A stretch of DNA of 64,000 bases from Kudoa neothunni (lineage: Eukaryota > Animalia > Cnidaria), in contig OZ199838.1 in assembly GCA_964304625.1 (NCBI GenBank), forward strand, positions 10,991,607 through 11,055,606. Direction: 5' to 3'. A program made the position numbers and the translations under genes. Below, in pieces: positions 10,191 to 57,089 of the stretch; position 1 is the stretch's first letter; each line of letters opens with the position of its first letter. The notes beneath the pieces were generated by a model. It was not told the origin of the DNA and searched no databases. It saw only the letters and a list, made by a program, of their open reading frames with translations.

Positions 10191-11681
10191 ATGAAACTAT
10201 TGTTTTTCAGGATATTTGTTTTGCTATATTTTCAAAATATTTTGCCAGGCAAATAAACATTTTCAACCAGTTTTGATAATCTATTAGATCCTATATTACC
10301 TTCGTATGAAAGAGATGAGGGTGATTGGCCTGTCGATGTACAAAAAAGTATGGACACTGTCATCGATCGATGGTTCATTGACATCCAAGATGCTAAATGC
10401 AAACCTCTCGAATACCGAGGCATCAAAGGAAACTATAACAATTTCGCCTCAAAAGGACTATGTGAACTGCATGGTATTTTTATAAAGTAATGAACATTTT
10501 TGACCATTTCTTGTAGGAACGTTGACAAAAAAAGAAAAACTTCAGGGGTGCAAAAAACCCCAGCATCCAGGGCACTGCGTAAAAAACACAAAAATAAAAC
10601 AACAGTTCTATTTTGATCAAACAACCGCCCAATGTGTAAAGTTTGAATATAATGGATGTGGAGGGAGCTTCAATCGTTACGACAGTATAGAAGAATGCAA
10701 ATTATATTGTTTGAGTACATAAATATGAATATTTCTATAAAATTAAATCATATTTTGTAGATAAAAGGAATGGTGGGCTCACAAATGCTGATGATACGAA
10801 AATAAAAACAGTTGATGACAAAGGAGTTTACGAAGTACCAAATATATTGGACTGCGAGCTCAGACCTGATGTTAAAGACAAAGACCCAAGCACAGCAATT
10901 ATTGCTGACATTAAGAAAAATAAGTGTGCTTTTGCAGCAGTCTCATTGGACTCAAATACAAGAGGGATCTTTGGTTCGTTTGGTGAATGTGTCAAAATAT
11001 GTCTTCGTATATTTATTATTTATAGCAATGTCTTATATATTATAGCTAACCCAAGTACAGCTGTGGAGAATGGTGGTACTGTAACTCAGTATAACAAGAG
11101 AGTAGCTGCATGCGACATTGGTCCATCTCAAGTTGGTATAAGTAACTCAGATAGCCCACAAAGTGACGATGTTGTGTTCCGATACTACTATGACTCTCAA
11201 AATGAAGTGTGTAAGCGCATGGAAACAGGAGTAAATAAACAGGGACCCGACTTCAGTCCATCGAAAAATAATTTTCCCACTATGGAAATGTGCCATAGTT
11301 ATTGTGGAGCAGGTACAGATGTTAATTCCTGTTAAAAATTAAATTATGAAGAATTTTCATAGTTATATTATGCTTAAAAACTATTTTGAATTCGCAATAA
11401 ATTTAGCTAAGTATATAAAGAAAATTGTGGTCGAAGAAACTTGTGTTCAAGAAAAAGCGGGACAATGGATAGCCAACGATATATTTAAAGTCAAAAGATA
11501 TTACTTTAAAAAAGACCAAAATTTATGTCAAGCGTTTTATTACAAGGGATATGATGGGAACTCGAACAATTTTAAATCGAGTGCCGAATGCATAGCGGTC
11601 TGCGATGGTCACTACAAGGAAGAGGAGAAAGCTACCATTAATGAGACTCCAGAAGATGCACAAGCATCATTAACCCTCTAA
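10191..11681 (+). CDS. Secreted multi-domain Kunitz/BPTI protein (about 5 domains, mostly atypical)
   Basis: Hydrophobic leader MKLLFFRIFVLLYFQNILP. Kunitz motifs: RWF...C..LEY.G.KGN.NNF.S...C; FYFD.....C..F.Y.GCGGS.NRY.S.EEC...C; RYYYDS....C...NNF.T.E.C...C; RYYF.....C..F.Y.G.DGNSNNF.S..EC...C. The 3' end is approximate. Confidence 0.88.
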
Positions 11682-17265: not shown

Positions 17266-19792
17266 CAGGGGTCGGCAACCAACGGCCCGTCATGAATTGA
17301 CTATTGACTAGCATAAAAATTTTTCTTCAGTGTCTAAAATAAGTAAATAGTTTATACGTTTTCATTTAGATCGTTTTCTACATGTTAATATTTTGTCGAT
17401 ATAAACATTTCAGCTGACCAACATTCATTTTCATTAAGTCAAAATACTGAAATAAATGTGACGATCAAAATAACGTTAAAATTACTTTTTAAACAATATA
17501 AAATATTTTTAAAAATACATATAGGTATATCTTATTATTTGATATCACAATAAATAGTATTCCCATGAGTTAAGTAAGAGTTGGTTTCACCGTAAATGAA
17601 AAGTATTAGTTTATAATAGTTTTTACTTGACATAATTTTATAATTAAAATGACTTTTAAAATTTCTAATCTATATATTTATATTAAGAAAAATGGTGCAG
17701 GGATACAACGCACTTTTGTTGGACAAACCTTTTAGGTGCGTAGTACCCCCGCAGTACACAGTATCTATGCTCGGCGGATAATAATGGCGTGCGGTCGTAC
17801 TTTGTATTTAAAAATTACATTTTCTCTCGTATATTAATGATAACTCGTAGGTATTCAGACAAAGTTGAATGTTAAACAAAAAACAACAAATATCGAATAA
17901 ATACATTATAATCATTCGAAAATTAGTAGATTTGTTTTAAATAGGTGGCTATTTTATCATTCTTTTACGAACCGTATCTTATTTTACGGATGGCAAAGTT
18001 CAATTTTGTTTTATTTTCTAACGCAGCTAAGTCATGAGCAAAAATATTTACTCTTAATTTATTTAAATATTCAATGGTTTCATTAATGGAACAAAACGTG
18101 CCAGTTTTTTCATAATTTTTATCAGAAAACGATTCATTCATTGCGTCGACTTCATTATTTATTGAGTTAACGTATTTATCTTCAGGACCTCTAAATGAAG
18201 TAATTTCTTCTATATTAATCCGACTTTCAGTTTGGTTTTTCTAAGGATTTGCTTCCAATCAAAAGGATAATGCCTCCTAATCCATAATTATTAACAAGAA
18301 TGATTTTTTAAAACAGTTTTTGATTGTTTATTCATTCATTAATTTCCATACTTCCTTCATTGTGTACATATTTTCAAGTAAATCTGCAGAATCATTATTT
18401 AAGTTGTTATCAAAAATACTAATGGAATTAACTTGCACTTTATTTATCAAAAAATTCGTCAGATGATTTTTGTCAATTTATTAAAAAAAGTTAATAATTC
18501 TTTCATCTGATTGTTGCAATACACTGATTGTTTCATGTGGAGGAAAACAGAGTTGAATATTTTAAAAATTTAGCGTGGGATGAGCTGAGAAATTTTTGCC
18601 AAATCATATGATTCTTCTCTTACATTGATAAATTTCAGCTTTTATACCATTGAACGTTTTGAAAAATTAAAGTTCCCTGTTAGTGTAATAGGGAAGTGGG
18701 AGATCTTTTATTTAACGGAAGCACCAAGGTTTTTCACGATGGCGAATTATTAGTAAGAGTTTTTTTCTAACATCGAGTTGATCGCAACGATTGTTATTTT
18801 CTCTTTGGATTTTGTAGAACCCCCCAAGTTTTTTTCTATTTCAAATGCATAACCATACATTAAATTTTACACAGAGATAAAAATTTTAATGATATTTTAC
18901 GTTTTCTTCGCTGGTAAAATAGTCCAGTTTCATCCAAATAAAAGATATCTTTTGGATCATAATTTCCGACCAACCCTAACAGTAGATCATTCCAAGGGGA
19001 AACTAATTTAAGAACAACACTCCTGGATTCATCTACGAATTTGTTATTTATAGTCCAGCCCTTGAAGAAAATTCTTTAAACCAACCTCTACCAACCTTAG
19101 CAATTGTGTTTTAACTTCATATGAATAATCGTAGACCTTTTCAATTATATCATCCAGAGAGAGTTCGATATTACGCGATCTCTTTAGCTCAATCCACTCT
19201 AACCCTAGAATCTAAATGTTGAAATTATTTTTTCTTAAGGTTTCCTTGCTGTGATGTAGATCCTCGGTATTAAATTCTTCCAGAATATTGTTCTTTTTTA
19301 ATATTATGCTGTTTAAGGAAGATTTCGATTTTAATTCAAATTTCTCTGTTGTTTTAGCTTCTGGGCCACTGAATTTTGTTATATCATCATAATAGTTTAT
19401 TATTTTAACTTATCATCTAACTATCGATATTATCTCAGATTTCTTAACCGCGTAACAACCATGTCGTTGGATTTAGTTGTGGGATTTATAGAGAGCAATA
19501 TCCATGAAGTGCGCAGTAAGCAGGTAATCAAATTTTCTCAGACTCTAAGTCCTATTTTCAAAAATAATTTCGCTTGGTTAATCATTTTTAAGTTTTTATT
19601 ATTATAAATAACAACATTGTGTATTTTTATTAGAAAACATTTCCATAATATCATAAAGTGCGTACTACCCCTGCATTACTGTATTTGAATTAAGAATAAT
19701 TTAACACTTTTGGAAATTATTTTTAATACAGTCCGTATCAAAATTACGGTATGTTTGTTTTGCCCAACACTCAAAAAAGTTGCCGACCCAAG
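17266..19792. mobile_element. hAT MITE interrupted by a nested pogo/Tigger element
   Basis: TIRs CAGGGGTCGGCAAC / GTTGCCGACCCAAG with TSD TTATATAT / TTATATAC. Segments 17266-17690 and 19682-19792 align colinearly with the uninterrupted copy at 44501-45040. Confidence 0.85.
17690..19681 (-). mobile_element. Decayed pogo/Tigger (CENP-B/DDE_1) transposon
   Basis: Ends resemble GTGCAGGGATACAACGCAC and GTGCGTACTACCCCTGCATTACTG|TA. Minus-strand remnants LEWIELKRSRNIELS, GRGWF and NFSAHPTL...IQLCFPPHETISVLQQSDERII match 'DN.SAHP....LPPNTTS.LQP.DQGII'. Confidence 0.8.
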
Positions 19793-26843: not shown

Positions 26844-27064
26844 ATATATGTTACTTTAGTCAAAGAACCGAGAGCAGAACTTAATTATTATGAAATTGAT
26901 TCCAAATTTTTTCTATCCAATTTAACTAGGATGCCTTATTTTACGAACAATGTTATTGCATTCATTTAGGTAATGAATAAGCTAATAGGTATGAATACAT
27001 TTTCTGGTCTACAATTACGCAGAATAGATTCATTACATCTAATCCGTAGATACATCGAATAGCC

Positions 27065-27078
27065 TGGAAAATTTTCCA
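27065..27078. promoter_or_regulatory. Perfect 14-bp palindrome TGGAAAATTTTCCA upstream of surface-protein copy 1, followed by TATAAAA at about 27126
   Basis: Identical at 31224-31237 upstream of copy 2, although the surrounding promoter has many substitutions. Confidence 0.5.
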
Positions 27079-27259
27079 ATGCTTTTTACAATATCATTAC
27101 GAAACAAATGTTCTACATATCGTTGTATAAAATGAACTTTTGTAAATGAGAAATAATACCTACCATACTCATCATTCCAGACATCGTCGCTTATTGATGA
27201 TTAATATTTTTTTGTGCTCAATAACACCGAAAAAGATTAATAACGAAGAATCATAAAAT

Positions 27260-29897
27260 ATGAGGCTAATAAGTTTTATTTTATTTTCGACAATACTCAC
27301 AAAAAGTAAAATTAGGAATATTTTTCATTAAATATTACCATTTAGTATGTTGTCACAAGTATTTCATTGAACAAATTGAACGACCAGCAGAAGAACCACA
27401 AACAACTGAAACTCAAGAACCGCAATCTACTGTTAATCAATCAGTTTCACAGTCAAATACCCTGTCGACGTTGATGAAATCCGGTGATCAAGCTAGTTCC
27501 GATTCTGAGGATAGTTCTGTTAGTAGTTCCGACTCTAGTACTGGTAGTTCTGATGGTGACACCGAGCTTGCTGCTGATGCTATTGAAGATAATGCTGACA
27601 CTGAGGAGTCTAATGAAGATAAAGATGATGATGATGACAGCGACGTTTCACCTCCTACCAGCGACTCAACTAATGCGGACGAAACTACTACCACCGAGGC
27701 TCCTCCTGAAACTACAATAAACCCAAGTGATATACCTATAAATGATCAAATAATCTCCAAATACATGGATAAAATCACAATACATTTAAAGGGGGACGAA
27801 AACGAGAAATGCAAAATAGAACATTTGTTCAGAAATGGAGACAGATCCAAATTTAATGAAACTATGTGTATAATAGGTGAAACCCAAACTGTAGCCGTAT
27901 GTGAACCTCAATGTAATCAGACGGTTGTGATTAATGTCAATAGTGGACGATTTATGCATTATTTCAGGGTTACCGAAGGAAGGAACATTAATATATTAGC
28001 GATTCCGGCAGGTAAATCATAATACTTAGATTTTTGAGATTATTATTTAATAGATATGCCCAGACTTCCTGAAACTAACGTAACTCTGAGCGAAGAAAAA
28101 GCGCAATTCGGAGTTAACAATTTCTGTACAGATAATTTCAGATGCCGAGTAAAAAGCACAAGATATGATAGAACTTTAGTCAAAGTAGAAAATAACAGCT
28201 GTGAACTACACAACATTACTATACCAATTCGTTACTCAATGTCCAGCGCCTATTATTCATACTGCGGTGCAAATCAAGCTAAAATCATGTTTTATGCCAA
28301 CAAGTCTTTCTACAATAAAGATAACAAATACCAATATGTTCCTTTTACTGTTACTCAATCAGCCAGTCAAAAAGCTAATTTCCCATTAACAATGGAGAAT
28401 CCCTATATGAACAATGAAATTTGCAATTTCCAAATAAAGGATGGAACTAATGTTGGTTATAAAGATAAATGTAGTCAAACTGGAAGCGCAGATTCAGATA
28501 AATGTTACAAATACTGTGGTGGGGCTACCACTTTGGTCTGGGATGGCAAAAATGATGATGTTAATGATTATACTGTCAAAATTGCTACTAGACATGGGGA
28601 AGAAAATTACAAAATTAAAAGTATATGCAATTCAGATATGATAAAATTTATTGTTTTATAGAAGACAAAAATACTGTAGAGCTGTCCGATATCACAGCAA
28701 CTTCAGCAAGTTATCAAGCTACTAATACCGAGGAGTCTAAAAAATGTTTCCCTTCATTAGTCCACGCGAAAATTCCTGGTATTGCAATGAGCAATATATG
28801 TGGTGAAGGTAGAAACTTAACTTGTCCAGAAGCATGTGCCACGAAGACACAATTAAATCTTTTAACCCCAAACACGGCATACATACTTGAGATGGTAATT
28901 GGCACATCGAAATCTGATGAAAACAAAAATGTTGTTAACAAATTTCTCGCCACAGGTATAAATATAAGATACTATAAATACTTAATATGATTAGCACCAA
29001 TAAAATTCAGCGAAACAAAAGTATTGTTTTTCGGTGATACAATGATTATGACCCCAGGAGCAGTGAGTGCATATGAGTCGTATCTCCCGAAAATGAAATG
29101 TTATGTGAGATACATGAAACCCAGAAAACCAAGAAGAACAATAGCCACCTGTTCTGATGGAAAACCATGTTGGGGTCTGTGCTCTCAAAGATTTGAAGTA
29201 GTAAATTTGCCGGTTAATGTAACATTAAGTATCGAGTTGGTTCATGCTGGCCACGTTGATTATCCAGTTTATCAAGTGTCACAATTAATAAGTGAATAAA
29301 TATTGATGCGACAACATTAACTCTGATATTTTAATCTTAGAACCCAATGATACTAAAGCAAAACCGGAAATAACTTTTGATATTGTTGAAAAGAAATTAA
29401 CTATCATACCAGACAAAACTCAACCAGGAAATTTATGTGATGTGGTTATTTACGCAGTCAATCCTGAAAACCCCCAAGATAGATTTTTGTTTGAGAAGAT
29501 AGGAAAACCAACCGATGAAGATATTGATTGTGCAAACTCAGTTGTATTTGACAATATAGATATAAAATACAGCTATCAGTTGTTATCTGGCGATGGACAA
29601 TCTGCAGCAATTATTGACGAGATTGAAGTCGGAAGTAAATTATTGTTATTTATTTATTGTTATATAATTTTATATAGAACAAGGATCTGGGTAATCATAA
29701 TTATTATATATATTATGAATTTGAACAATTTATTTTCATTTAGTGGTTGGATGAAGAAGAACTGGTGGATGTAATTTTCATATGAAGATATAGTATAATA
29801 TTTCATAATTAATTTATTTAGTATTTTCGCAGTGTTGGGTGCTTTGGGTGTGGTTATTGGTGCAGTGGCCTTTGTGGCGAATAAATCCAGTGACTGA
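27260..29897 (+). CDS. Uncharacterised single-pass (type I) surface glycoprotein, copy 1: signal peptide, Ser/Asp/Thr-rich region, about six Cys-containing ~98-aa modules, TM helix, 5-aa tail
   Basis: Nine-exon model: 27260-27305, 27346-28011, 28054-28620, 28662-28955, 28995-29291, 29341-29634, 29678-29690, 29744-29770, 29822-29897 (2280 nt, 759 aa, all GT-AG, frame-consistent). Begins MRLISFILFSTILTKICCH and ends WWIIFAVLGALGVVIGAVAFVANKSSD*. Confidence 0.88.
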
Positions 29898-31420
29898 AAC
29901 TCCTTCTTCTTATGAAACGATAGATACTATTAGTCTTTTTATAAAATTATTCCTTTTTTTGATGTGTCTATCTGTTTTTAAATCGTTAGAATTAAATTAA
30001 TTTTTGTTTAATGTGAATCAAAGACTGTTATATAAACGATTTTTAAAAATACTAGAGCAAAGCTAAAAATTTTTCTGCTTCTCAAACTAACATATTTTAA
30101 AAATCAATTAAATAATTTTATAAAAAATGCGATCAAAAAAAATATTTGTGTCAACTATAGAAAATATTCTTATTTTAGTTAATTTAAAAAACTAAAGGGT
30201 CTATTAATGTAACTTATTAATATCCTTTGATCAAAAAATGGTACATACGAGAGGTTTTCTTTTCAATAAGTAAGAAGTAGGTTATTCGTCGTAACTGTAG
30301 CAATTATGGAAGGAAATTTGATAGGATTTTTTGAACAACTTGTTTCTTTTATCAGTAAAGGCGTTTAAATAGAAAAAAATCCAAAATGATAGAAAATATT
30401 GGGAATTTGATAATATACATCAAAATATGAAATAGATTGCTCAACTAAATTAATGGAAAATTGTTGAAGCTATTGGAAAAGTTCCAAAAACGCCATGGAA
30501 CACGAATCATTCATTGGCCATTAACATCAATTTCAATATATAGTAGGTAAGAGAGTCAGATATCAACAATCTAAATAATATAAATTTTAATTTATAAAAG
30601 ATAAACCAACTTGATTATGGGAAAATTCTGGTGACATACCCAAGTTGAGCACAGCCTAGACATGTAATCGTGCTTACATTTCGATAGAGTTTGAACAACT
30701 CCCGATCACGTATTTTTCCTTATACTAAAAAATTGTTTTTATGTGTGATTCTACATACGTCTTAAGACGGTAAATAAATCTACAAGCTAAAAGTGTGTCG
30801 GATATATTTTGTTTATTATGAAAGCACCTTTAACCGATTTCACATAATTCGCTCGAGAATATCAAAAATGCACGAAAAAACTAAATAAGAAAATTTTAAC
30901 TTCAAGTTAACTTGATGATTTTATTAATCTGTTATAATTACCCTGATTTTTATTTTATAGCTTTATTAAAGTACGTTTAAAATAAATACGCTGAAAAGAA
31001 GAGAAATTATAAGATAATAAACTAAACCCATTTTTATTTCAATAATTTTAAGTTAACTAAAATATCCGAATTTTTTATAAATTTTCTGCCGTATTATTAC
31101 ATCCAAGTTGCAGCTAGCAATATTACAACTATTAACGTACGATTTTATCTTCGTAATGTACTCAGCAGCATTCTTTATTCAAATAGATTCATGAATTCTA
31201 ATCCGTAGATACATTAAATAGCCTGGAAAATTTTCCAACGCATATTAAAATATCAAATTGAAATAATTATTCTATATATTGCTGTATAAAATGAACTTTT
31301 TTAAATGGGAAATAATGTCTGCCATACTCACCATTTTAGACATCGTCGCTTATTGACGATTACTATTTTTTTCTTTTCAATAACTACGACATCAGATTAA
31401 TAACGAAGAATTAATAAAAT

Positions 31421-34060
31421 ATGAGGCTAATAAGTTTTATTTTATTTTTGACAATACTCACAACAAGTAAAATTAGGAATAATTATCATGAAATATTCCC
31501 ATTTAGTATGCGGTCATAAGTATTTCATTGAACAAATTGAACGACCTGCAGAGGAGCTCAAAACACTTGAAACTCAAGGAGCGCAACCCAATGATGGACA
31601 ACCAGTTTCACAATCAAATATCTCACCGATATTGATGAAATCGGATGTTTCCACCAGTCTCGATCCTGATCCTGCGAGTCCTGTTGGTAGTTCTGACCCT
31701 AGTACTAGTAGTTCAAGTGATGACCCAGGTTCTGAGACTGGATCTACTGAATCTAAAGCTGATGCTGAGGTTGCTGATGAAGATGAAGATGCTGGTGACA
31801 GCGACGTTTTACCTCCTATCAGCGCCCCAACTGAAGATACCGAAACTGCTACCACCGAGGCTCCTCCTGAAACTACAATAAACCCAAGTGATATACCTAT
31901 AAATGATCAAATAATCTCCAAATACATGGATAAAATCACAATACATTTAAAGGGGGACGAAAACGAGAAATGCAAAATAGAACATTTGTTCAGAAATGGA
32001 GACAGATCCAAATTTAATGAAACTATGTGTATAATAGGTGAAACCCAAACTGTAGCCGTATGTGAACCTCAATGTAATCAGACGGTTGTGATTAATGTCA
32101 ATAGTGGACGATTTATGCATTATTTCAGAGTTACTGAAGGAAGAAACATTAAGATATTAGCAATTCCGGCAGGTAAATCATAATACTTATATTTTTGAGA
32201 TTATTATTTAATAGATATGCCCAGACTTCCTGAAACTAACGTAACTCTGAGTGAAGAAGAAGCGCAATTCGGAGTTAACAATTTCTGTACAGATAATTTC
32301 AGATGCCGAGTAAAAAGCACAAGATATGATAGAACTTTAGTCAAAGTAGAAAATAACAGCTGTGAACTACACAACATTACTATACCAATTCGTTACTCAA
32401 TGTCCAGCGCCTATTATTCATACTGCGGTGCAAATCAAGCTAAAATCATGTTTTATGCCAACAAGTCTTTCTACAGTAAAGATAACAAATACCAATATGT
32501 TCCTTTTACTGTTACACAATCAACTAGTCAAAAAGCTAATTTCCCATTAGAAGTGCATAATCCTTACATGAACAATGAAATTTGCAATTTCCAAATCGCT
32601 AGTAGTGGTGGTAGTAGTGATTTTAAAGATAAATGTACTCAGGCAGGAATTGCTGCAAGTGATAAATGTTATAAATACTGTGGTGGGGCTACTACTCTTG
32701 AATTGACAGGAGAAAGCGGAGATGTAAGTAGTTATACTGTCCAAATCGCTACTAGACATGGTGAAAAGAAATACAAAATTAAAAGTATACACCTACTCAA
32801 CTAATCAAATTTATTGTTTTATAGAAGACAAAAATACTGTAGAGTTATCCGATATCACAGCAACTTCAGCAAGTTATCAAGCTACTAATACCGAGGAGTC
32901 TAAAAAATGTTTCCCTTCATTAGTCCACGCGAAAATTCCTGGTATTGCAATGAGCAATATATGTGGTGAAGGTAGAAACTTAACTTGTCCAGAAGCATGT
33001 GCCACGAAGACACAATTAAATCTTTTAACCCCAAACACGGCATACATACTTGAGATGGTAATTGGCACATCGAAATCTGATGAAAACAAAAATGTTGTTA
33101 ACAAATTTCTCGCCACAGGTATAAATATAAGATACTATAAATACTTAATATGATTAGCACCAATAAAATTCAGCGAAACAAAAGTATTGTTTTTCGGTGA
33201 TACAATGATTATGACCCCAGGAGCAGTGAGTGCATATGAGTCGTATCTCCCGAAAATGAAATGTTATGTGAGATACATGAAACCCAGAAAACCAAGAAGA
33301 ACAATAGCCACCTGTTCTGATGGAAAACCATGTTGGGGTCTGTGCTCTCAAAGATTTGAAGTAGTAAATTTGCCGGTTAATGTAACATTAAGTATCGAGT
33401 TGGTTCATGCTGGCCACGTTGATTATCCAGTTTATCAAGTGTCACAATTAATAAGTGAATAAATATTGATGCGACAACATTAACTCTGATATTTTAATCT
33501 TAGAACCCAATGATACTAAAGCAAAACCGGAAATAACTTTTGATATTGTTGAAAAGAAATTAACTATCATACCAGACAAAACTCAACCAGGAAATTTATG
33601 TGATGTGGTTATTTACGCAGTCAATCCTGAAAACCCCCAAGATAGATTTTTGTTTGAGAAGATAGGAAAACCAACCGATGAAGATATTGATTGTGCAAAC
33701 TCAGTTGTATTTGACAATATAGATATAAAATACAGCTATCAGTTGTTATCTGGCGATGGACAATCTGCAGCAATTATTGACGAGATTGAAGTCGGAAGTA
33801 AATTATTGTTATTTATTTATTGTTATATAATTTTATATAGAACAAGGATCTGGGTAATCATAATTATTATATATATTATGAATTTGAACAATTTATTTTC
33901 ATTTAGTGGTTGGATGAAGAAGAACTGGTGGATGTAATTTTCATATGAAGATATAGTATAATATTTCATAATTAATTTATTTAGTATTTTCGCAGTATTG
34001 GGTGCTTTGGGTGTGGTTATTGGTGCAGTGGCCTTTGTGGCGAATAAATCCAGTGACTGA
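31421..34060 (+). CDS. Uncharacterised single-pass surface glycoprotein, copy 2 (tandem paralog)
   Basis: Same exon structure offset by about 4.16 kb. Near-identical to copy 1 except the acidic N-terminal region and module 3. Confidence 0.88.
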
Positions 34061-34360
34061 AACTCCTTCTATCTACTAAGGAAAACATAATTTTACTTCT
34101 TATGAAACGATAAATACTATTAGCTTTTTTTAAAAAGTTATTCATGTTTGTCGATAAGTGATGTCTATTATTTTTTAAAGATTTTGAATTAAACTTATTT
34201 TTTGATTATGTTATTCAATGACTGTTATATAAACGATTTTTAAAGATACTGGAGCAGTGATTCACAATCGGGGTTCAATGAGATAGTGCCGAGGGTTGGA
34301 CGGACGAGGAAAATTTTGATTTTCCGTTCTGCACACCCTGTTGGCGAAATTTGAGTAGTA

Positions 34361-34481
34361 CCGCGTTTCCACGAAATTAAGACCCGGTCTTGTATTAATT
34401 TCACGTTAGAAATTGGTATTAGGTCTTATATTTAATACATCATGCAAATTAGCACTAGGTCTTATTTTCGAGTAAACACGG
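34361..34481. mobile_element. Tc1/pogo-type MITE nested in the hAT 5' region
   Basis: TA|CCGCGTTTCCACGAAATTAAGACC ... GGTCTTATTTTCGAGTAAACACGG|TA, i.e. 24-bp imperfect TIRs with TA duplication. Confidence 0.8.
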
Positions 34482-34744
34482 TACCACGGGGAGCTACTTA
34501 TTTCGATGAGATACAAAGATTTCCCTTAAAATAAAAATTTATTTAGATAAATACACTTTTTTACTATATTCTACAACATCCATAATCAAAAAGTGACCGT
34601 ATATGATTATTTATTTCCCCTCCTCCGTAATGAATATACAATGTGCACCAAGTTTGCTGAGGTGTCATTTTCTAGTCCAATCAGATCGATCAGCTGCGAC
34701 TTGTTGTCTTTGATTTATATTGCTAATTATTATAAATATGCTGA

Positions 34745-36560
34745 AGATGACGAGAAAGTGATCAGACAACTATGCTGAATATGGTTTCACCGTAGCAACT
34801 CCTGTCGACGAAAGTCAGCATGCCCCGTATATGGTCTGTAATGCTGTGCTAAGTAATTTTAGACTCGCCCCTGCAAAACTACGTGAACGTTTTATGAAAC
34901 TTCATGCAAATGGCCAATATGAAAATGCAACAATTGCAGATTTTAGAGCTAAAAAGATCAAATTTGATCAACAGAAATCATTATCTGATCTGGGCTTTGT
35001 GTCAACTGATAAACAAATTTTGCAAGCATCCTACGAAATATCATATTTGATTGGAAAACAAAATAAGCCTCATACAATTGACGAATCATTAGTTAAGCTA
35101 GCTGCGATGAAAATGGCAAATATCCTTATAGGTAAGACTGCCGAACCTAAATTTTCCCAAGTTTCTCTCTCCAATAATACTGTGCGATGCAGAATGATAG
35201 ATATGAGCAATGATATACTGTCGCAAATATTGGAACATCTGATTTCAAACCCACTAAAATTTAGCCTCCAACTTGACGAAACTACGGGTATTGTTGATGT
35301 GTGCCAGCTTTCTATATTTGTGAGATATTTCTACCAACATCCCATACAAGGAGAAATCTTATTCTGTAAACTCTTCAAGAAGACGACAAGAGTATCTGAT
35401 ATAAAAAAAATGGTTGGTGACTTTTTCCAAGAACATCAACTTACGTGGGATATGGTGTCTGCTATATGTACTGATGGTGCTCCTGCCATGCTTGGAAAAA
35501 ACTCTGGTTTTGGGTCTTTAATGAAAGCTGATGCTCCGCATATAATTATAACACACTGTATTCTTCATAGACATGCGTTAGTCATGAAAACCTTTCCTCC
35601 GAAACTCAAATTTGTATTGAATGTTGTTGTTGAATGGGTGAATTACGTGCGAAAAAGTGCATTAAATCATACAATTTTTAAGGATTTATGCAATGAGTTG
35701 GGGTCGGATTTTGAAACACTTTTATACCATTCGAATGTTCGATGGCTGTCTAAAGGAAAGGTATTAAATCGTGTTTTCGCATTACGCGAAGAACTTGCCA
35801 TATCTCTAAGGGAACAAAGGTATCAACATGTCCATCATTTTTCGGATGCAAAATTTGTTATTACATTGGCGTATATGGCTGATATCTTCAATACCCTGTA
35901 CCAACTCAATCTTCAAATGCGAGGAGACGGAATAAATATAATCGAAGCTGGAGAAGAGATTCTAGGATTTCTTAAAAAATTAGTTCTATGGATACGTAGG
36001 GTACAAAATGGGAACTTTACTAATTTTCCCTTGCTGAATGATTGCATTAGTACTTTTGAAGATATCGGTGGGTTTACAGATGTTTCTTTACTCGATAACG
36101 TGAGAGGCTCAATTGTTTTACATTTGAGTGAGCTAAAAACATCCCTTGAAGGATATTTTCCAACAGAAATATCCTATCCAACATGGGTAAGACAACCATT
36201 TCTGTTTTCAGTATCATCAACTGGTGTAAATGAATATATTTGGATGAATGATTAGTTTACAACCAAACAAACTGCAACAACAATTATTCAGTACTTCAAC
36301 ATTATCCAATTTTTGGTGTAATCTAACAACAGATTACCATTGATTGCAAATACTGCCCTTAACCTAATCATCCCATTTGTATCAACATATCTATGCGAAC
36401 AATCATTCTCGGCTTTATTGGATATTAAACCAAAAAAACGAAACAGGCTTGAATGTGGCGATGACATGAGAATGGCGTTAGACAAATTCGTACCTAGAAT
36501 TTCAAAAATAATTAATGAAAAAACAGAAGCAAATTCCACATTAGTTTTTATTTATATATC
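34745..36560 (+). pseudogene. hAT transposase (ZBED5/ZBED8/FAM200/SCAND3-like), disrupted
   Basis: Motifs FSLQLDETT, CTDGAPAM, HCILHRHAL, VRWLSKGKVL and PFVSTYLCEQSFS. Upstream MTRK*SDNYAEYGF has a nonsense codon, the BED-finger Cys/His residues are eroded, and there is a frameshift near 36240. Confidence 0.92.
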
Positions 36561-38689
36561 TGTTTTTATTTGCTGTAATGCGAAAATCATACATAACTTT
36601 CCAAATTTTAATATTGTATTTTATTTTATAGGGGTTATAGAGATTTAAAATTGTTAACAAACATGAAGAAAGCAAAATTTGATTATTTGATTAAACAAAA
36701 ATTGTAATCTCAAATCTAATTTCACCATGAAATTTTATATTTAAATTAGATATTGTGATATACATACAATAGTATTATTAAAAAATAGTAAATAATTGTA
36801 TGTCTAATAAAAAAATATGGACAATATTTTCTGATCTTTCGTTTAACGAAGCTTCGGCAAGAAAATTTTAATATATTAAATCATGGCCCGTGGTGAACGA
36901 CTTGCAATAATATAAATATCTATCTCAATATAGATTCATGAATCAATTTTTGTTAAATTCGAATTTTAGATATGGGAAAACCATTCTGTCCATCTGGAAT
37001 AAAACTACTGTTTAATCAAATTTTTTGTTCTGTGATAAATATTTTAAAACTTATCATTTTGAATCGATCCGGAGTTTATTTTTTTTATATTAACAAAAAA
37101 CTTTTTTAATTAATCTTTAATACACGCTTGTTTATATGCATTTAAAAAATTCGTCTCATCACCTATAAATGATACATTTTTGAAACTTTAGATAATTATG
37201 GCGCGTAAAAATGTATTTATTACTGTTAAATTAATTGGACTGGTGACTTTATAAAATGACGGAAAAACATGGTATCATAACAAGGAGGGGTTCGATAGAG
37301 ATTTCGTAAGATCTCTATGGGTTCGATGAGGTATGAAACGTTGGGAACCACTGTATTAAAGCGATACTCAAACTAAAGTTTTTCATCTTCTTCTCAAATT
37401 AGTTTACTTTAAAATTAATTAAAAAATTTTATAAAAACTGTGACTGCAAACAATACGCTTGTATCAATCAAAGAAAACATTCGATTTGTTGTTAATTTAA
37501 CTGGTCAATGCATTTATTGGTAAAATTTATTAAATATTATTTTTTAGAACGTGGTAAATATGAGAGAGTTTCTCCACAAGAAACAAGCAGTAGGTTATTC
37601 GCGATAGCTGTAACAGTTATGGACGGAAAATTTAATAGATTTTTTGCACTATTTGTTTTTTTATCAGTAAAGGCGTTCAAATAGAAAATGAAGTTTAAAG
37701 TTTAAGGAATATTAGGAAGTTGAAATAATTTGGGATAAAATAGTCAAAAAAATTAATGGAAAACTACTGTAGTTGGAAAAACTTCAATAATGTTATGGCA
37801 CGAGAATCATTCACTGCTCATTAACACCAAACTCTAATAAAAAAGGGGATATGACCGTCATATAGTAAAAATCTCAATAATATATAACACATAATATAAC
37901 TTTAATGTATAAAATAAAGTCCAGTTTGATTAGAAGCGCATTCTGGTGATAAACACAATTGAACGTAATCTAGATACATGTATCCGCGTTTACAGTTCGA
38001 TTGAGCTTTATCGACTGCAGAGCTTATACTTTTTGTTATATTTACTAAAAACCGATTTAAAGCCTGATTTTTATATACGTTTTTATATTGGATAAAATTA
38101 AACTACCAGTTGAATATGTATCGGATATTCGTTTTAATTTATGAATGTGTAGTTGGTAACCGATTTCGCTTAATTCGCTCGAGAATCACATGAGGCTACA
38201 CAAAATCTAGTTGGGCAGATTATTATTTTAAATAACTTGAATATTTTATTAATTTTTTTTGTACCGATTTTTATTTTATCTTATTATAAATGATTTAAAA
38301 TAAATAAATTTAAAAGAAGGGAGATTTTATGGTAATATTCTAAACTCACTTTATTTTGATAATTTTTTTATTTGAGCTAAGTAAAATATTTATGGCGTTT
38401 ATATAAACCTTCTGCTTGATTATTACATCTAAGTTACACCTATCAATATCATACCTGTTTACGTAGGTTTTATATTTTTACAATGTATTCAGTAGCATCT
38501 TTTGTCAAATATATTCAGTAATTTTTTAATCAGTCAGTTAACGCTTCATCTTCAAACTATGCCAATATTATAATACTTCCTTTTTTTCAATTTTTATCAT
38601 CTATGTAACTTCATGTTTCATATCGATAATATTTGTATTTTTATTAAAAAAAAGATTTATTCAAAAAGTTTATTAATTTTATGTCTCAT

Positions 38690-41084: not shown

Positions 41085-42011
41085 TCAACGAGTTCGTTTA
41101 GCGGTCATCTTTTTGAAATCATCTCTATCCAACTTTACAGTGCCATTAGATCCTCGATGGATAAATAAGGGGTTCGATTGATCTACCCACCAACCTCCAT
41201 TTCTAAAAAAAATTTAATCCTGCATGACACCAAACGAAAATATGAAAATATACGGGACATTTTTGACGAATTTTTGCTTGAATCGTGTACCTTTGGATTG
41301 ATCTGCTTTTTTAAAAGTAACCAAAGATGTACCAGCCTATTAAATGTTAATTAATATCAATAAATTATCAAGATGTGAAATCGCTAAATACGCTATCTTC
41401 TCCGACACCTAATATCAATCGTTTCTGTTGTTCCTTTCTTAGTTCCATTAGTTTGGGATATGGAATCGAGGTTTTCTTTTTCTAAATGTTGGCTCAAAAG
41501 TTATTCGAGCTTTAGTTATCTCTTACGGGAGCTCCCAGTTTTTCCGCCCATTCCTGTGAATAAATACCTTTCAACGGCTTCGATCTCTTCATACAACTGA
41601 TTGCTACAATATTTATCAGATTTATCAACTAAAAATGTTGGATACCTAGTTTTTCCACATCCACTTTAAATTTTTTCACATCAAATGGCTCATCTTGGCT
41701 AATACACGGTTTCAACTATAAAAAACAATCATATAATTGCCAAATTTACTTTTCAATAGAAGACGTGATGACTTCTTTTCTAGGTTTTGTTTTTCCCTAA
41801 TAACAATTATTAATATGTCCAAGCGAAAGATTAAAGAATTTATTTACTGCTTGATTTTGTGGTTTTCTATTACTTTGCATAAAGCAAACAACTACAGGTT
41901 TTTGCGCATCAGCGTTCTTATTCACTTTTTTAGCTATAGGATTATAAGTCTATAAATCCAGTTTATCGTCTGCACTAGAAAATACTTGGAAACTGATCCA
42001 TGATTAAGCAT
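41085..42011 (-). CDS. C1orf131: C1orf131/Faf1-like (DUF4602) SSU processome assembly factor; not in the ORF track
   Basis: Spliced translation: QKPVVVCFMQ...QDEPFDVKKFKVDVEKL|AISCMKRSKPLKGIYSQEWAEKLGAP|KKKTSIPYPKLMELRKEQQKR...RGSNGTVKLDRDDFKKM. This matches the family pattern 'F.L.K...EV..FG...A..LGAKP.K...NYK.L...G..KNGTL.LS..DI.K'. The start codon is uncertain (42011 or 41880). Confidence 0.8.
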
Positions 42012-42037
42012 GCCTTGCGTACGCAATATAAAACAAA

Positions 42038-42945
42038 TGAAGCGCCACCTAGACATTTCGCCTCGCTCTTTATGGTATACGTTGACAATACTGACAAATA
42101 ACAAATTTTCACTTAGTGATGTAGTCATTGTGGACAACAATGATGTTTTTAGACGAAAATCACTGGCTCAAATCATGCAAAATATGAAATCGCACAGCGA
42201 ACGCAGCATGACTGTCGATGATTCGTTTGATTTGACACCCACATTCATTGCTGTCAGAGATCCAAATACTGCAAAACAAATCGTTAAATGGATCACTTTG
42301 GGGAATTTTCTCCATAAAACTTCGGTTCTATCGTCCTTAGCAACTTTTGTTGTGCCACGTTTAGTTCCGGAAAATTTCAGGAATGTGGTCGTTCTTTTTT
42401 TTGGTTTCAGTGCTATTTTGTCGGCCATATTCTACAATTCGTCTTGGATGTTTGACCCCTGTTCACAATATCAGGTATTTTTGTCTTCTTTATTTATATT
42501 ATGTGAAAATGAGAATTATAATTTTAAATTGCATCTGAAAATTTTAATTTGTTTCAATTTAAAATACAATATCATAAAAATTAACTTACGTAATGTTACA
42601 TTAATTATATTACATTACATTTTGTAGAATATTTCAAATTGAGTATTATTTTTTTAATTTTCAACATGAGCCGTAAAAAAATAAATTTTTTACTTGATAT
42701 AATAATTTGGTTAGGTGGAAAAACGAGCTGAAGTTCTGTCTATGCTGAAACTTCCCAGAAATAAAGCTAGAAATTTTAATGGCGTCTATTCGGTGGTACT
42801 TGTACGCAGAGATGACTATTATAGACGATTGCTTCACAATTTCACCATGTTCTGTACAGCAACTAAATTGTGCCTTGTGTTTTCCGATTTCTTGAAAATG
42901 ATTGTTACGGAGGTGGCCACTATAGTTCAACAGCAACTAGCCTAA
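42038..42945 (+). CDS. TMEM11: Transmembrane protein 11, mitochondrial (PMI family)
   Basis: KWITLGNFLHKTSVLS, YNSSWMFDPCSQYQ|VE, VVLVRRDDYYRRLLHN. Intron 42475-42714 and a probable in-frame 42-nt intron near 42076. Start is 42038 or 42010. Confidence 0.92.
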
Positions 42946-44500: not shown

Positions 44501-45040
44501 CAGGGGTCGGCAACCTGCGGCCCGTCAGCTATTTATATTTGTCCGCCATGCAAATTGACACAAATTTTTCTTAGAAACTAAAGTACCTAAATACGTTTTA
44601 ATTTGTATCTAAATCGTTTTTCCAAGTGTTAACATGTTGTCGCTATAACTTTTTAACCAATTAAATTCATTTTCAGTAAATCAGAAACCTGGAAAAACAT
44701 GACTGCTAAAATAACGTTAAAATTATTTCTATAAAAGTATAAAATATTTAAAAAAAGACATATAGGTACATTTCACGTTATTTGATATCTTCGATAAATC
44801 GTTATTCCATAATTTAAGCACGAGTTGGTTACTCTTTAAAGGAAAATTATTGGTATATAATACTTTTGATTAGTTATACCTTTGTAGTTTAAGTGACTGT
44901 TATTAATTCGAAATTATATATTTCAACTCAAAATTTGAATTTAGATTATTTTACTATTTTTCAAATCGATTCCAATACGGTCGTATTGGAGTTAGTGCAT
45001 GTCTGTTAGGTCCGTCAACCAAAAAGGTTACCGACCCTTG
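44501..45040. mobile_element. hAT MITE, uninterrupted relative of the 17266 element
   Basis: TIRs CAGGGGTCGGCAACC / GGTTACCGACCCTTG. The interior aligns with 17266-17690 plus 19682-19792. Confidence 0.85.
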
Positions 45041-47752: not shown

Positions 47753-49630
47753 CTATAGGTCATTGAAATGAAGTTGTTTCGTAATTTTTGCATCCTGGAG
47801 GTTATCATCCTGGTTATTTCTTTTCAGAATGAGATGTTTATTAGAATCGCAGTGAGTGAAATAGCCGTAAGGATCATTCATTGATATGGCGTGGGGGAGA
47901 GGAAGCTCGTTTGAAGAACACCAGCTCTGGAAACAGTTGACAGCCTCCTCAAACAAACACTCCATAGTCGCACTATTGAATCCGTCACACATCGATCTAA
48001 ATTCATATAAATTATACGACAATTCTACTCAATCAGAAAAAATTGACGCATACCCAAAGTAAACTCTGAGAATTTTGTCGGAAAATTCTTTAGGAATCAT
48101 ATTACTTACACATTGAGCGCGAAGTTTTGCAAACTGACCATTCTTTGTGTGAAATACAATCGAATTGACAGGATTGGACACACTCAAACCACTGGAAATG
48201 TCTATAATCTCCACATGAAGCAGACTAGGATTGAGAGCGTTTCTTGTGTCGAATCTGAGTATCTCCTGTAATACTTTTGTCTTGAAGTCAGCATTTGATT
48301 GTTTCCCCATAGTAGTTGTTTGATCAAGTGTCACTTGTCCGCACAATTTAAGAATTTTCCGATTGATTATAGAAGTCAAAATATGCTTTGACTTTTCCAA
48401 AAGTGAATCGTTGGAATAGAGTATCTGATAGAAAATATGATCTGTCAATTTTAGAAACAAGGATGGATTGTTCAATGCTTCACTTAACTTAAAATAATGA
48501 TCAGCTGACTTGAGTGCTTCAACTACCATCAGTTCGACTGGTCTTACAGTCTTGTGTTGGTATACTTTTCGATGAAGTCTCCATCTTGAATAAAAAAGTT
48601 CATTCACATTAAGAAATTCTTTATCTCTGGGGCTTATGTGAATGCCATCGAGAGTGGTTTGTAGCAGTTGACAATTTTGAAAGTAGCGTGTATAATCAAA
48701 ATTGCATTTGAGACCGACGTAATGGCAATCTCGCATCATATAATCAAACTTATCGCAATCAATTCCAGTGAATTTGTTGGACACAATTTGAAAAAGAAAC
48801 CATTTTTTAATCCTGAAATTAGGATCATCCCTTAGTGTACAATAGGGTATTGAATTGTCTTCATCACTTTGTCCATTTTCACTAAGGAATGAAATATGTT
48901 CAGCTCCATCACTTTGACTAAGCGATGAGTGTAATTTATCAGCCGGCGTCTCTAATGACGTCATGTACGTTATATTAGAGGGAGATTGTGGATTGTAAAG
49001 AGGGTATTCATCTTGAACAAAATTATCATGATTATCATGAGTGTGTCGATGGGGAATTTTCAGGAGGTTGTGAGGGGTTGCTCCAAGAATCAGTTGTTTA
49101 ATTAGTTTTAGGTCGTTCTCATCCAGCCCCGCAATTTTCATCTGCATGCGTACCTGAGAATTATTTTCGATTAGGTGGTCGATCATTCTACATGACATTT
49201 CCTCATGAGTCCAACGATCGATGTTATTGTCGCTGATTTTTTCAAACATATGTGAAAACGGTCCATGACCAATATCATGTAGTAGACCGGCCAATTCGAC
49301 ACATATGATATCCTTGTTGGTGATCAGTTCACAGGTAAGCTTTGTTTTCAGTTCCAACCCAAGAGGGGATTGGTTTAATCGTTCTTGTAATGTGCGTAGG
49401 AACTCTCGGCACAAATATGCTGTCCCAATCGAGTGCTCAAATCGAGTATGCACTGCGGATGGATAAACAAAGTTGGTAACACCAAGCTGTTTAATATTGC
49501 GTAATCGCTGGAATTGTTCAGTGTCAACAATACTTTTGATTAGCGGTGAAAATGAGATGTTACCATAGAGAACATCATTTACAGCAAGTCTTCTTGACAT
49601 ATAACTGTTGTCGATGCAACCAAGAGACAT
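47753..49630 (-). CDS. SAMHD1: Deoxynucleoside triphosphate triphosphohydrolase SAMHD1-like (HD domain, no SAM domain), two exons
   Basis: Intact motifs FQRLRNIKQLG, HTRFEHSIG, GLLHDIGHGPFSHMFE, HEEMS, IDCDKFDYMMRD and LHRKVYQHK. A 57-nt intron (GTATGC...TTTAG, about 47997-48053) joins ORF 48029..49630 to ORF 47753..48022, whose FQSWC matches FVQWC. Confidence 0.93.
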
Positions 49631-55356: not shown

Positions 55357-57089
55357 TAAGCTATAAACCATTCTCCCAACGACAATATTTTTGTAGAATA
55401 ATGCTATGTTTATTTGGGGTTTTGTTGTCTCCTTTTTTTCAAAAAAAATTATATTTGAAATTTTCGCTTGGGTGAAATTGTGATATTGGATTAATATTAA
55501 CTCTTAATGTTAAATACAGAGATATTCCAGTCCACAGACTTTCTTGTAATAACTGTCTACTAAGTCAAGTTGTAAACTTTCTGAATATACTAATATGCAG
55601 TGTATTATTAATTAATTAATTAATTAGGTGTCGTGTAATTTTTGCATATGCCTAGTTCAGCGCTGAAAATAATGCAAAAGAGAGAAATTATTTTTTAAAT
55701 TCCTCCTAAAATAAATCAATGATTTGTTTTATTTAGAGCGACTATTATGAAATATTAGTTATGTACAATTGAAAGACATTTATATTTAAAATAAACATTA
55801 AATTACATATTTTAATTCAGAAAATATTCCCTTAGCCTACAGAGAATAAAGCAGAATATGCTGGCATGATAAACTTTAATCCTAAACGGCCTGTTCGTTT
55901 TCAAAGATAGGGAATTATTATTCCCACCGACTCTTATTTAGAAGCTGTGTACAGGTTTAATTTTGTAGAATCTGCTGTATTTAATTACCGCAACAATAAC
56001 CACATCCCATTAAGAATTTACAGTCAATTATAACATACCACTTTTTGTATTTTTATTTAACACTATCGAAAATTGTTCAGCTTTCGATAGCAGTGGGTGA
56101 AGGGAGTTTTAAATTGATAATTGTTTTTATAAATGAGTAAACATTAAACTAAAGTATATATAGGCAATGAGATGAAAACCTCAACGTTTTATCTCCAAAT
56201 TTTTATTTATGCATTTTGAAGATGAGTTTTGTTTTAATCACGTAACAGTGTATTATAATGGCGAAGAAAGTTTAATTAAATAACTACTCCTACGAAATAA
56301 CAAATGTAGCAATCTATTTGACTTTCGAATGTTTACCGTAAAAAATCAACAAATTCTAAACGAATATGAGACTTGAATATATTTTGTAAGTGATATCGTA
56401 ATTTTTAAACAATTCACCAGCATTTCAAACACCTGCAAAGATCAGCATATACAAGAAAATATATTGTCGCACATGCGTACTCCGGTGACATAGGAAAATA
56501 CAAACGATTTTACATATATAGAAAACAAATCCAATTATCACATGTGTTTTAATTACGTTTTGTAACTATTGAAAATAATTTATTTTGGTGAATATATAAT
56601 TTTTAATATAAATAATCTCTGCTGAAGATGTTTATAAAAACGAAAAATGCGGGTTTTGAATAAATTATGTAATATATTTTTAATTAAACTAATAAATCTG
56701 CTGGGGAAAATATAAACTAAATATAGAAATAATCATCCCAAAATTAAAATCTTATTATCACATAAAATCAATCACGAGATAAATTTGATATATTAAAAAC
56801 ATAAAACACGATCGGACGGTTGCATGATAATTTGCGCAATAAGGACAACGGAAACAAAAATTAGTGGTTGTTATTTAAATACGTAATAAATGTATATTTC
56901 TCCAATAAAATTCAAAACAATAATTTCGAAAAATTAGTTATTCCCATGCGCCATAAAATCGCATATTCCTTCTACTAATTTTCTTATTTATTGTACAACA
57001 ATTATATGATTCTTTAATAAAATACCTCACAAATGTATTTATTGGACAAATAGTCACTTTAAATAGTGGTTTTAAGTAATATAAGGATT

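What the first reader, a model, noticed from the sequence alone, without database searches (positions are those of the whole stretch)
27260..34060. Tandem surface-protein genes are a mosaic of identical constant blocks and hypervariable patches: candidate variant surface antigen system under gene conversion
Seen in sequence: the two copies read as identical over about 28690-29830 vs 32850-33995, including five introns, and near-identical over about 27690-28350. Three regions differ strongly: the acidic N-terminal tract (about 27390-27690), module 3 plus its intron (about 28350-28660), and the promoter, 3'UTR and spacer. Module 3 reads LTMEN..IKDGTNVGYKDKCSQTGSADS..VWDGKNDDVNDY vs LEVHN..IASSGGSSDFKDKCTQAGIAAS..ELTGESGDVSSY, with every Cys kept. 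Identical introns inside diverged flanks do not fit a single recent duplication. Inference: an old duplication is being homogenised by gene conversion while exposed patches diversify, as expected for a host-interacting or allorecognition surface protein.
Basis: partly seen in the sequence, partly recalled or inferred. Interest (0 to 1): 0.85.

Follow-up and report, generated by a model that had tools for sequence, protein, structure and literature searches.

The report
Conversion-resistant module in Kudoa surface proteins
Two neighbouring genes for a membrane-anchored surface protein of a tuna-muscle parasite (almost certainly Kudoa neothunni) are old duplicates that keep overwriting each other's DNA except in one middle module, and the same module stays different in five other gene clusters, which marks it as the likeliest host-facing part of a protein family not yet described in print.

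Summary
Observation confirmed. Genes A (27260-29897) and B (31421-34060) encode 759/760-aa type I membrane proteins: signal peptide, acidic tract, six Cys-stapled FN3-like modules, TM helix, 5-residue tail. They are identical over 1149 bp (five introns) but 77% identical in module 3 (dS 0.56) and 74% in the acidic tract. The duplication is old: its 4.16-kb unit includes a two-copy spacer now 71% identical, split by a decayed hAT transposon. Gene conversion is therefore well supported. The genome matches Kudoa neothunni; the pair belongs to a 17-copy subfamily of a much larger family. New here: module 3 is the divergence peak in all six informative clusters, including a subfamily only about 25% identical. 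Synonymous sites diverge too and site tests find no omega>1, so module 3 is an old island that escapes conversion, not a fast-mutating patch. Simulation explains the acidic tract neutrally; module 3 only partly (p about 0.01-0.04). No expression-site switching, allorecognition or expression was shown; reads and RNA were unavailable. The scan has already noted this family and its conversion mosaics on other DNA of this genome.

The parts
27023..31181 (+). Tandem duplication unit 1 (4159 bp): upstream region, gene A, 3' flank and spacer
   Evidence: self-BLAST; junction
27023..27259 (+). Upstream region of A, 84% identical to 31182-31420
27260..29897 (+). Gene A, 9 exons (27260-27305, 27346-28011, 28054-28620, 28662-28955, 28995-29291, 29341-29634, 29678-29690, 29744-29770, 29822-29897), 759 aa, open frame; exon sizes conserved in 10 intact paralogues. 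Model inferred, no RNA
27260..27355 (+). Putative signal peptide (exon 1 and start of exon 2)
   Evidence: sequence; hydrophobic N-terminus, (weak in A, clearer in B/L004); no predictor run
27346..27687 (+). Acidic Ser/Thr/Asp-rich tract; 74% identical to B (31507-31848); dN/dS about 1 across the family; indel-rich
27688..28354 (+). Converted tract 1 (modules 1 and 2, intron 2): 9 differences from B 31849-32515
28335..28620 (+). Module 3 of A: FN3/Ig-like beta sandwich with C-x15-C-x10-C-x3-C; the divergence island; variable A-B, C-C', C'-E and E-F loops
   Evidence: AF2 pLDDT 88.6, fold search, entropy, dS 0.56 vs B
28621..28684 (+). Intron 3 (70% identical to B) and first bases of exon 4: right edge of the island
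28662..28955 (+). Module 4, most canonical FN3-like module; homologues score fn3 at E 7e-5 to 2e-3, below Pfam's cut-off
28685..29905 (+). Converted tract 2 (modules 4-6, introns 4-8, TM exon): 1149 bp identical, one substitution, 71 bp identical vs B 32848-34068
29822..29897 (+). Transmembrane helix and 5-residue cytoplasmic tail without a tyrosine motif
30050..30057 (+). Empty transposon target site in unit 1 (8 bp, central TA)
30060..31197 (.). Spacer of unit 1; exactly one other copy in the genome (37370-38523), 71% identical: dates the duplication
31182..38523 (+). Tandem duplication unit 2, interrupted by the transposon
31421..34060 (+). Gene B, 9 exons (31421-31466, 31507-32172, 32215-32784, 32825-33118, 33158-33454, 33504-33797, 33841-33853, 33907-33933, 33985-34060), 760 aa, open frame
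32496..32784 (+). Module 3 of B: 27 of 95 aligned residues differ from A plus one inserted codon; Cys kept
34255..37353 (+). Buster/ZBED5-type hAT DNA transposon (3099 bp, imperfect 13-bp terminal inverted repeats, 8-bp target duplication decayed at 3 positions); transposase frame 34831-36255 ends early, rest in another frame; nearest genomic copies 85-89% identical
37370..38523 (.). Spacer of unit 2

Best explanation
A and B arose by an old head-to-tail duplication of a 4.16-kb unit (shown). Germ-line gene conversion between the neighbours has since repeatedly overwritten modules 1-2 and modules 4-6/TM together with their short introns (shown as a pattern; conversion inferred). The acidic tract, promoter and flanks drifted beyond the identity that conversion needs (inferred; reproduced without selection). 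Module 3, with the start of module 4, is kept different because copies that become identical there lose their value: selection removes conversion tracts that cover it, helped by the barrier that accumulated mismatches create (inferred; the Teshima-Innan 'peak of divergence' model). The proteins are single-pass surface proteins of six Cys-stapled FN3-like modules; the variable A-B, C-C' and E-F loops of module 3 would sit at the end facing module 4, so the module 3/4 elbow is the likeliest site contacting a host molecule (fish antibody, receptor or cell-surface ligand, or a molecule of the invertebrate host). The family thus works as a standing, heritable repertoire of binding or antigenic variants on a shared scaffold, not as a programmed switch.
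For: Spacer two-copy and 71% identical, with an old hAT in one unit vs dS 0-0.06 in five modules. Same peak in L004/L006 (100% for 1362 bp, then module 3 80%), C1:11.86 Mb and C3:4.47-4.52 Mb clusters and in a subfamily about 25% identical: L043/L044 dS 0.60 in module 3 vs at most 0.08 elsewhere, L041/L045/L048 likewise. Between clusters module 3 is not more diverged than module 4 (pS 0.49 vs 0.53, pN 0.23 vs 0.22), yet neutral simulation puts islands on module 3 44% and module 4 54% of the time and gives a clean module-3-only pattern in 7 of 4677 runs; 4 of 4 clusters gives p about 0.04, 6 of 6 about 0.007 if the split carries over. Module-3 tree rejects the module-5-to-TM topology (AU p=4.6e-4); intragenic recombination test p=2e-4; a cross-chromosome patch L003 shares with L007/L008 (93-95% vs 63-65% to A/B). 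The only close pair homogenised across module 3 involves a broken copy (L007/L009, 204 bp identical). Fold.
Against: No site-level positive selection in module 3 (p=0.08). The simulation is simple, its parameters are guesses, and neutral islands at module 3 do occur. In the C3 cluster 2 of 10 pairs peak at module 4. L048/L049 are identical across module 3. No expression, localisation or binding data; loop geometry rests on FN3 topology from general knowledge, not on a joined module 3-4 model. Assembly is from about 7x HiFi (PMC12239612) and reads could not be checked.
Confidence: 0.6

Rival explanations
1. Purely mechanical island: conversion is real, but module 3 escapes only because its loops are weakly constrained and indel-prone, so it crosses the divergence threshold first and then cannot be converted; no selection for difference.
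For: Neutral simulation does create islands at modules 3 or 4 and readily frees the acidic tract and flanks; no omega>1; module 3 has the highest between-cluster mismatch among modules (0.301 vs 0.286 for module 4).
Against: Module 4 should be the peak about as often; observed cluster-level peak is module 3 in 6 of 6; A/B differ in module 3 by only one in-frame indel; clean A/B-like pattern 7 of 4677 runs.
Confidence: 0.27
2. Programmed antigenic variation: silent genes and pseudogenes donate module-3 cassettes to an expressed locus during infection, or one member is expressed at a time.
For: 7 of 17 close copies are broken or partial and exchange tracts with intact ones; module 3 shows recombination; stage-wise antigen change is reported for myxozoans, mechanism unknown (PMC8481699).
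Against: In cassette systems the variable part is what gets copied; here it is the part not copied, and its synonymous sites are old. Ten copies are full-length with own upstream regions; clusters are interstitial on three chromosomes; no flanking cassette repeats seen.
Confidence: 0.06
3. Self/non-self recognition between parasite cells, an Alr-like allorecognition system inherited from free-living cnidarians.
For: Cnidarian origin; single-pass proteins with mostly one module per exon, tandem clusters, pseudogenes, as for Hydractinia Alr (PMC9546547).
Against: No sequence match to any free-living cnidarian protein among 1.84 billion representatives; no V/I-set Ig pattern; different Cys pattern; 5-residue tail with no ITAM/ITIM; variation is between paralogues in a middle module, allelic polymorphism untested.
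Confidence: 0.04
4. Assembly artefact: identical blocks are collapsed or cross-corrected, or two haplotypes are stitched in tandem.
For: Low (about 7x) coverage, diploid parasite, haplotypic duplication had to be purged (PMC12239612); reads not checked.
Against: Blocks are at most 1.2 kb, far shorter than HiFi reads (general knowledge), with unique anchors on both sides; isolated substitutions lie inside the tracts; spacers differ by 29% whereas the paper finds diversity low; an old transposon sits in one unit only; tracts cover different parts of the gene in different clusters.
Confidence: 0.03

Closest known systems
Peak of divergence under interlocus gene conversion (Teshima and Innan model; red/green opsin exon 5, RHCE/RHD, protocadherins; review PMC3924837)
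   Same: Old duplicates, introns homogenised, narrow island of synonymous and amino-acid divergence at one functional region; pseudogenes as exchange partners as in MHC and plant R genes.
   Different: Here the island recurs at the homologous module in six clusters and two subfamilies about 25% identical; function of the island unknown.
Hydractinia Alr family (PMC9546547)
   Same: Cnidarian single-pass proteins, clustered, domain-per-exon tendency, FN3-like fold with extra Cys, pseudogenes.
   Different: Alr has V/I-set Ig domains plus one FN3-like domain and often ITAM/ITIM tails; this has six FN3-like modules, a 5-residue tail, no detectable homology.
Taeniid EG95/45W oncosphere antigens (PMC2671473)
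   Same: Metazoan parasite surface or secreted FN3 proteins in gene families with variable sequences.
   Different: EG95 is GPI-anchored with one FN3 domain and has positively selected sites; here six Cys-rich modules, TM anchor, no significant omega>1; unrelated lineage.
Sphaerospora molnari VSP-, RIFIN/STEVOR-, ETRAMP-like families (10.64898/2026.02.11.705288)
   Same: Lineage-specific expanded myxozoan membrane proteins proposed as variant antigens.
   Different: VSP needs over 10% Cys and more than 5 CXC/CXXC; these have about 3% Cys and 0-1 CXXC; different myxozoan lineage and fold.
Class I/II cytokine receptor ectodomains and viral decoys (IL-9Ralpha 7ox5, poxvirus IFN-gamma-binding protein 3bes)
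   Same: Disulfide-bearing FN3 sandwiches; top fold matches (Z 7.2-7.3, rmsd 2.2-2.6, 75-80 residues); ligand site at an inter-domain elbow is the analogy.
   Different: Z-scores tie with unrelated glycosidase domains; no WSxWS or CxW; no signalling tail.

Membership tests
Concerted evolution with a divergence island | Duplication much older than the identical tracts | tested here: met
   Spacer distance 0.36-0.37, decayed transposon target site, vs dS 0 in modules 5-6
Concerted evolution with a divergence island | Non-coding and synonymous sites homogenised in tracts, with significant clustering | tested here: met
   Five identical introns; permutation p<5e-4; Fisher p=5.5e-14
Concerted evolution with a divergence island | Island maintained by selection rather than by a mechanical barrier | tested here: inconclusive
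   6 of 6 clusters peak at module 3, simulation p about 0.01-0.04; M2a/M1a p=0.08
FN3-like domain proteins | Seven-strand FN3/Ig-like sandwich | tested here: met
   Module 3 model pLDDT 88.6, matches FN3 domains Z 6.2-7.3; generic, Ig-like alternatives tie
Pfam fn3 (PF00041) | Gathering score 25 bits | tested here: not met
   A exons no hit; module-4 homologues 13.6-23.3 bits
Hydractinia Alr | V-set/I-set Ig domains plus one FN3-like ECS | tested here: not met
   Six FN3-like modules with C-x15/18-C-x5/10-C-x3-C; no Alr hit
Hydractinia Alr | Cytoplasmic tail, often with ITAM/ITIM | tested here: not met
   5-residue tail, no YxxL/I; three Alr tails are also under 14 aa, so weak on its own
Hydractinia Alr | High allelic polymorphism and allele-specific homophilic binding | not testable with these tools
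   One assembly, no reads
Diplomonad-type VSP | Over 10% Cys and more than 5 CXC/CXXC motifs | tested here: not met
   3.0-3.3% Cys, 0-1 CXXC (criteria)
Class I cytokine receptor | CxW and WSxWS motifs, box1 tail | tested here: not met
   None in 10 intact proteins; criteria from general knowledge
Programmed antigenic variation (VSG/vlsE/msp2 type) | Single expression site receiving variable cassettes; mutually exclusive expression | not testable with these tools
   No RNA or reads; anatomy argues against (variable part is the uncopied part)
Taeniid EG95/45W | One or two FN3 domains, GPI anchor, sequence homology | tested here: not met
   Six modules, TM helix followed by charged tail; no hit

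The most novel reading that the evidence does not exclude
The Cys-FN3 family is the main host-facing coat of Kudoa and related myxozoans, and module 3 (with the module 3/4 elbow) is a dedicated specificity module whose variants have been protected from gene conversion by selection since before the subfamilies split: an independently evolved, cnidarian-parasite receptor or variant-antigen repertoire on an FN3 scaffold, possibly expressed a few members at a time.
Probability: 0.25. Interest if true: 0.8.

Novelty: new variant of a known kind. Interest (0 to 1): 0.5.

Why it matters
Myxozoan surface antigens and the basis of their reported antigen changes are unknown at the molecular level (PMC8481699; 10.64898/2026.02.11.705288), and no paper I found describes this family in Kudoa. 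A divergence island that recurs at one module across clusters and subfamilies points to a 95-residue, well-modelled domain as the place to look for host binding or antibody pressure, and to the homogenised modules 5-6 as cluster-wide diagnostic or antibody targets. The evolutionary process itself is textbook.

Tried and rejected
Pfam on A exons: nothing. PDB sequence searches: nothing. Two-module AF2 model was poor (pLDDT 49). Foldseek gave no E<0.001 match. Profile-profile comparison among the six modules gave at most 3% probability, though HMM searches cross-match modules 3 and 4 weakly. The abalone hit P0123 (21 short stretches) was treated as a repeat-driven match and not pursued. Site-model positive selection not significant in any module (own implementation, 7-10 sequences, low power). 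First two simulation grids were off-scale (nothing or everything converted). Rejected: single recent duplication with fast evolution of module 3 (synonymous sites and intron 3 diverge too); dispersed-repeat origin of the spacer (two copies only); cytokine-decoy reading of the top fold hits (generic Z). Broken paralogues were only described, not mended.
Full report
Source. The window lies on contig C1 of a 40.26-Mb, four-contig assembly with about 30% GC and 39-53-nt introns. A SAMHD1-like gene in the window has cnidarians among its best named matches. Kudoa neothunni, a myxozoan of yellowfin tuna, was assembled to 40.2 Mb, three chromosomes plus a mitochondrion, GC 30.41%, median intron 49 bp, from about 7x HiFi reads (PMC12239612). 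The identification is by these matching figures, not by a direct sequence match; I reached it before consulting the scan's notes, which agree.

The observation. Self-comparison finds one 3.08-kb repeat, 27023-30059 vs 31182-34256, 90.9% identical overall. Divergence is strongly uneven: 1149 identical bases (28685-29833), 9 differences over 27688-28354, but 74% identity in the acidic tract, 77% in module 3 and 70% in intron 3. Both genes splice through eight GT-AG introns to open frames of 759 and 760 aa. The model is supported by the same exon sizes in ten intact paralogues but not by RNA.

The protein. Signal-like N-terminus, acidic Ser/Thr tract, six modules of about 95-100 aa, one TM helix, five-residue tail, 7-11 N-glycosylation sequons, about 3% Cys. 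Modules 1, 3, 4 and 5 share C-x15/18-C-x5/10-C-x3-C. Module 4 resembles FN3 by language-model features and its homologues reach fn3 at E 7e-5 to 2e-3, under the Pfam cut-off. Module 3 folded alone from a 29-row alignment gives pLDDT 88.6 and matches FN3/Ig-like sandwiches generically (best Z 7.3, rmsd 2.6, 75 residues). Variation among paralogues is concentrated in loops (mean entropy 1.20 vs 0.55 bits in strands; A-B differences 19 of 52 loop vs 8 of 43 strand positions), chiefly A-B, C-C', C'-E and E-F. In FN3 topology (general knowledge) A-B, C-C' and E-F lie at the C-terminal pole, facing module 4, whose B-C and F-G loops are also variable. That the variable surface is the module 3/4 elbow is an inference; the joined model was left out because the spliced sequence has no reference.

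Age of the duplication. The spacer after A (30060-31197) has exactly one other copy in the genome, 37370-38523, 71.4% identical, distance 0.36-0.37. Between B and that copy sits a 3099-bp hAT element of the ZBED5/FAM200 type with imperfect terminal repeats, an 8-bp target duplication decayed at three positions, an empty site at 30050 in unit 1, and nearest kin 85-89% identical. So the unit is 4159 bp, head-to-tail, and older than an already old insertion. Against that, A-B dS is 0.06, 0.03, 0.03, 0 and 0 in modules 1, 2, 4, 5, 6, but 0.56 in module 3 and 0.32 in the acidic tract. A single recent duplication cannot give this, and neither can two alleles of a low-diversity diploid. Conversion (or equivalent repeated unequal exchange) is the remaining explanation.

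The family. Seventeen close copies lie in clusters on all three chromosomes; ten are intact, L003, L009, L010, L014 carry frameshifts, L005 a late stop with a non-canonical donor, L016 and L017 are partial in the loci held. A profile of exon 3 finds 85 matches in the genome. Outside it, only six proteins of 1.84 billion match: one 66% identical from an ENA metagenome, four from two sequencing runs, one of which also holds the best SAMHD1 match; the sixth is a repeat-like abalone protein. The family therefore looks myxozoan-restricted, though the runs' organisms are not named.

The recurring island. Fifteen of 91 pairs carry tracts never reached in 2000 permutations. L004/L006 are identical for 1362 bp from the upstream region through module 2, 80% in module 3, 89% in module 4, then identical; L007/L008 and the C3 cluster peak at module 3 as well. 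In a second subfamily only 24-28% identical to A in exon 3, L043/L044 differ by 0-8% over about 3.3 kb but 23-32% in the module-3 homologue (dS 0.60), and L041/L045/L048 peak there too. Between clusters, module 3 is not special at synonymous sites (pS 0.49 vs 0.39-0.53) and equals module 4 in amino-acid divergence. The module-3 tree is star-like and incongruent with the 3' tree, shows internal recombination, and L003 on C2 carries a patch from the L007/L008 type on C1. No module shows significant omega>1. Module 3 is thus a reservoir of old variants that escapes overwriting, with some short-patch shuffling.

Selection or mechanics? In a neutral simulation using between-cluster site rates and divergence-limited conversion, the acidic tract and flanks escape routinely, so they need no selection. 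Islands in the modules fell on module 3 in 223 and module 4 in 274 of 506 cases, and the clean A/B pattern arose in 7 of 4677 runs. Four of four clusters peaking at module 3 has p about 0.04; six of six about 0.007 if the second subfamily behaves alike. The one close pair homogenised over most of module 3 includes a broken copy (L007/L009). This favours, but does not prove, selection against conversion, the signature described for opsins and RH genes (PMC3924837).

Comparison and verdict. It works like MHC, R-gene or opsin clusters: shared scaffold kept uniform, specificity region kept distinct. It fails membership tests for Alr, VSP, cytokine receptors and EG95. No paper found describes the family. 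The scan has already reported the family and its conversion mosaics elsewhere in this genome, including a pair differing in one exon; what this locus adds is an independent date for the duplication and the demonstration that the island sits on the homologous module across clusters and subfamilies. Programmed switching and allorecognition remain unsupported. Reads and RNA were unavailable, and further genome fetching was closed. Interest 0.5; new variant of a known kind.

Noticed in passing
window 34255-37353: Buster/ZBED5-type hAT transposon with decayed target duplication and a transposase frame that ends early; about ten related copies of 83-89% identity elsewhere in the genome.
   Followed up: yes
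window 42010-42627 (+) and 48029-49630 (-); L051: TMEM11-like (Mito_morph_reg) and intron-poor SAMHD1-like genes are convergent neighbours here and also on a contig from run SRR31175926 (54% identical SAMHD1): conserved gene order with a related organism that also carries this surface family.
   Followed up: partly
L048 and L049 (C2:8.18 and 8.197 Mb): Two family members 100% identical over the 3.5 kb held, 15.6 kb apart: a very recent segmental duplication or a false duplication in the assembly.
   Followed up: no
L003 (C2:2.90 Mb), aligned to window 28270-28410: Broken dispersed copy closest to A/B overall but carrying a patch 93-98% identical to L007/L008 on another chromosome: ectopic exchange.
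   Followed up: yes
L043/L044 (C3:8.14-8.16 Mb) and L040-L050: Second subfamily in which the same six-module block is preceded by further modules; second, more distant exon-3-like matches lie 2.7-3.8 kb upstream of several of them, consistent with longer multi-cassette genes.
   Followed up: partly
window 29678-29690 and 29744-29770: Two micro-exons (13 and 27 nt) before the TM exon, lengths fixed in all 15 paralogues aligned; ordinary GT-AG splicing gives an open frame. Earlier notes report nested introns at this position in another subfamily; not tested here.
   Followed up: partly
window 10847-11335: Open frame with a weak Kunitz domain match (E 0.0012, below cut-off).
   Followed up: no
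window 17266-17679 vs 44501-44923; 51660-51782 vs 55862-55987: A 72%-identical direct repeat of about 420 bp and a 75% inverted repeat of about 125 bp, probably old mobile-element fragments.
   Followed up: no
C1:11856048-11856587 and 11863509-11863892 (edge of L008/L028): Distant family members interleaved within the C1:11.86-Mb cluster of close paralogues.
   Followed up: no
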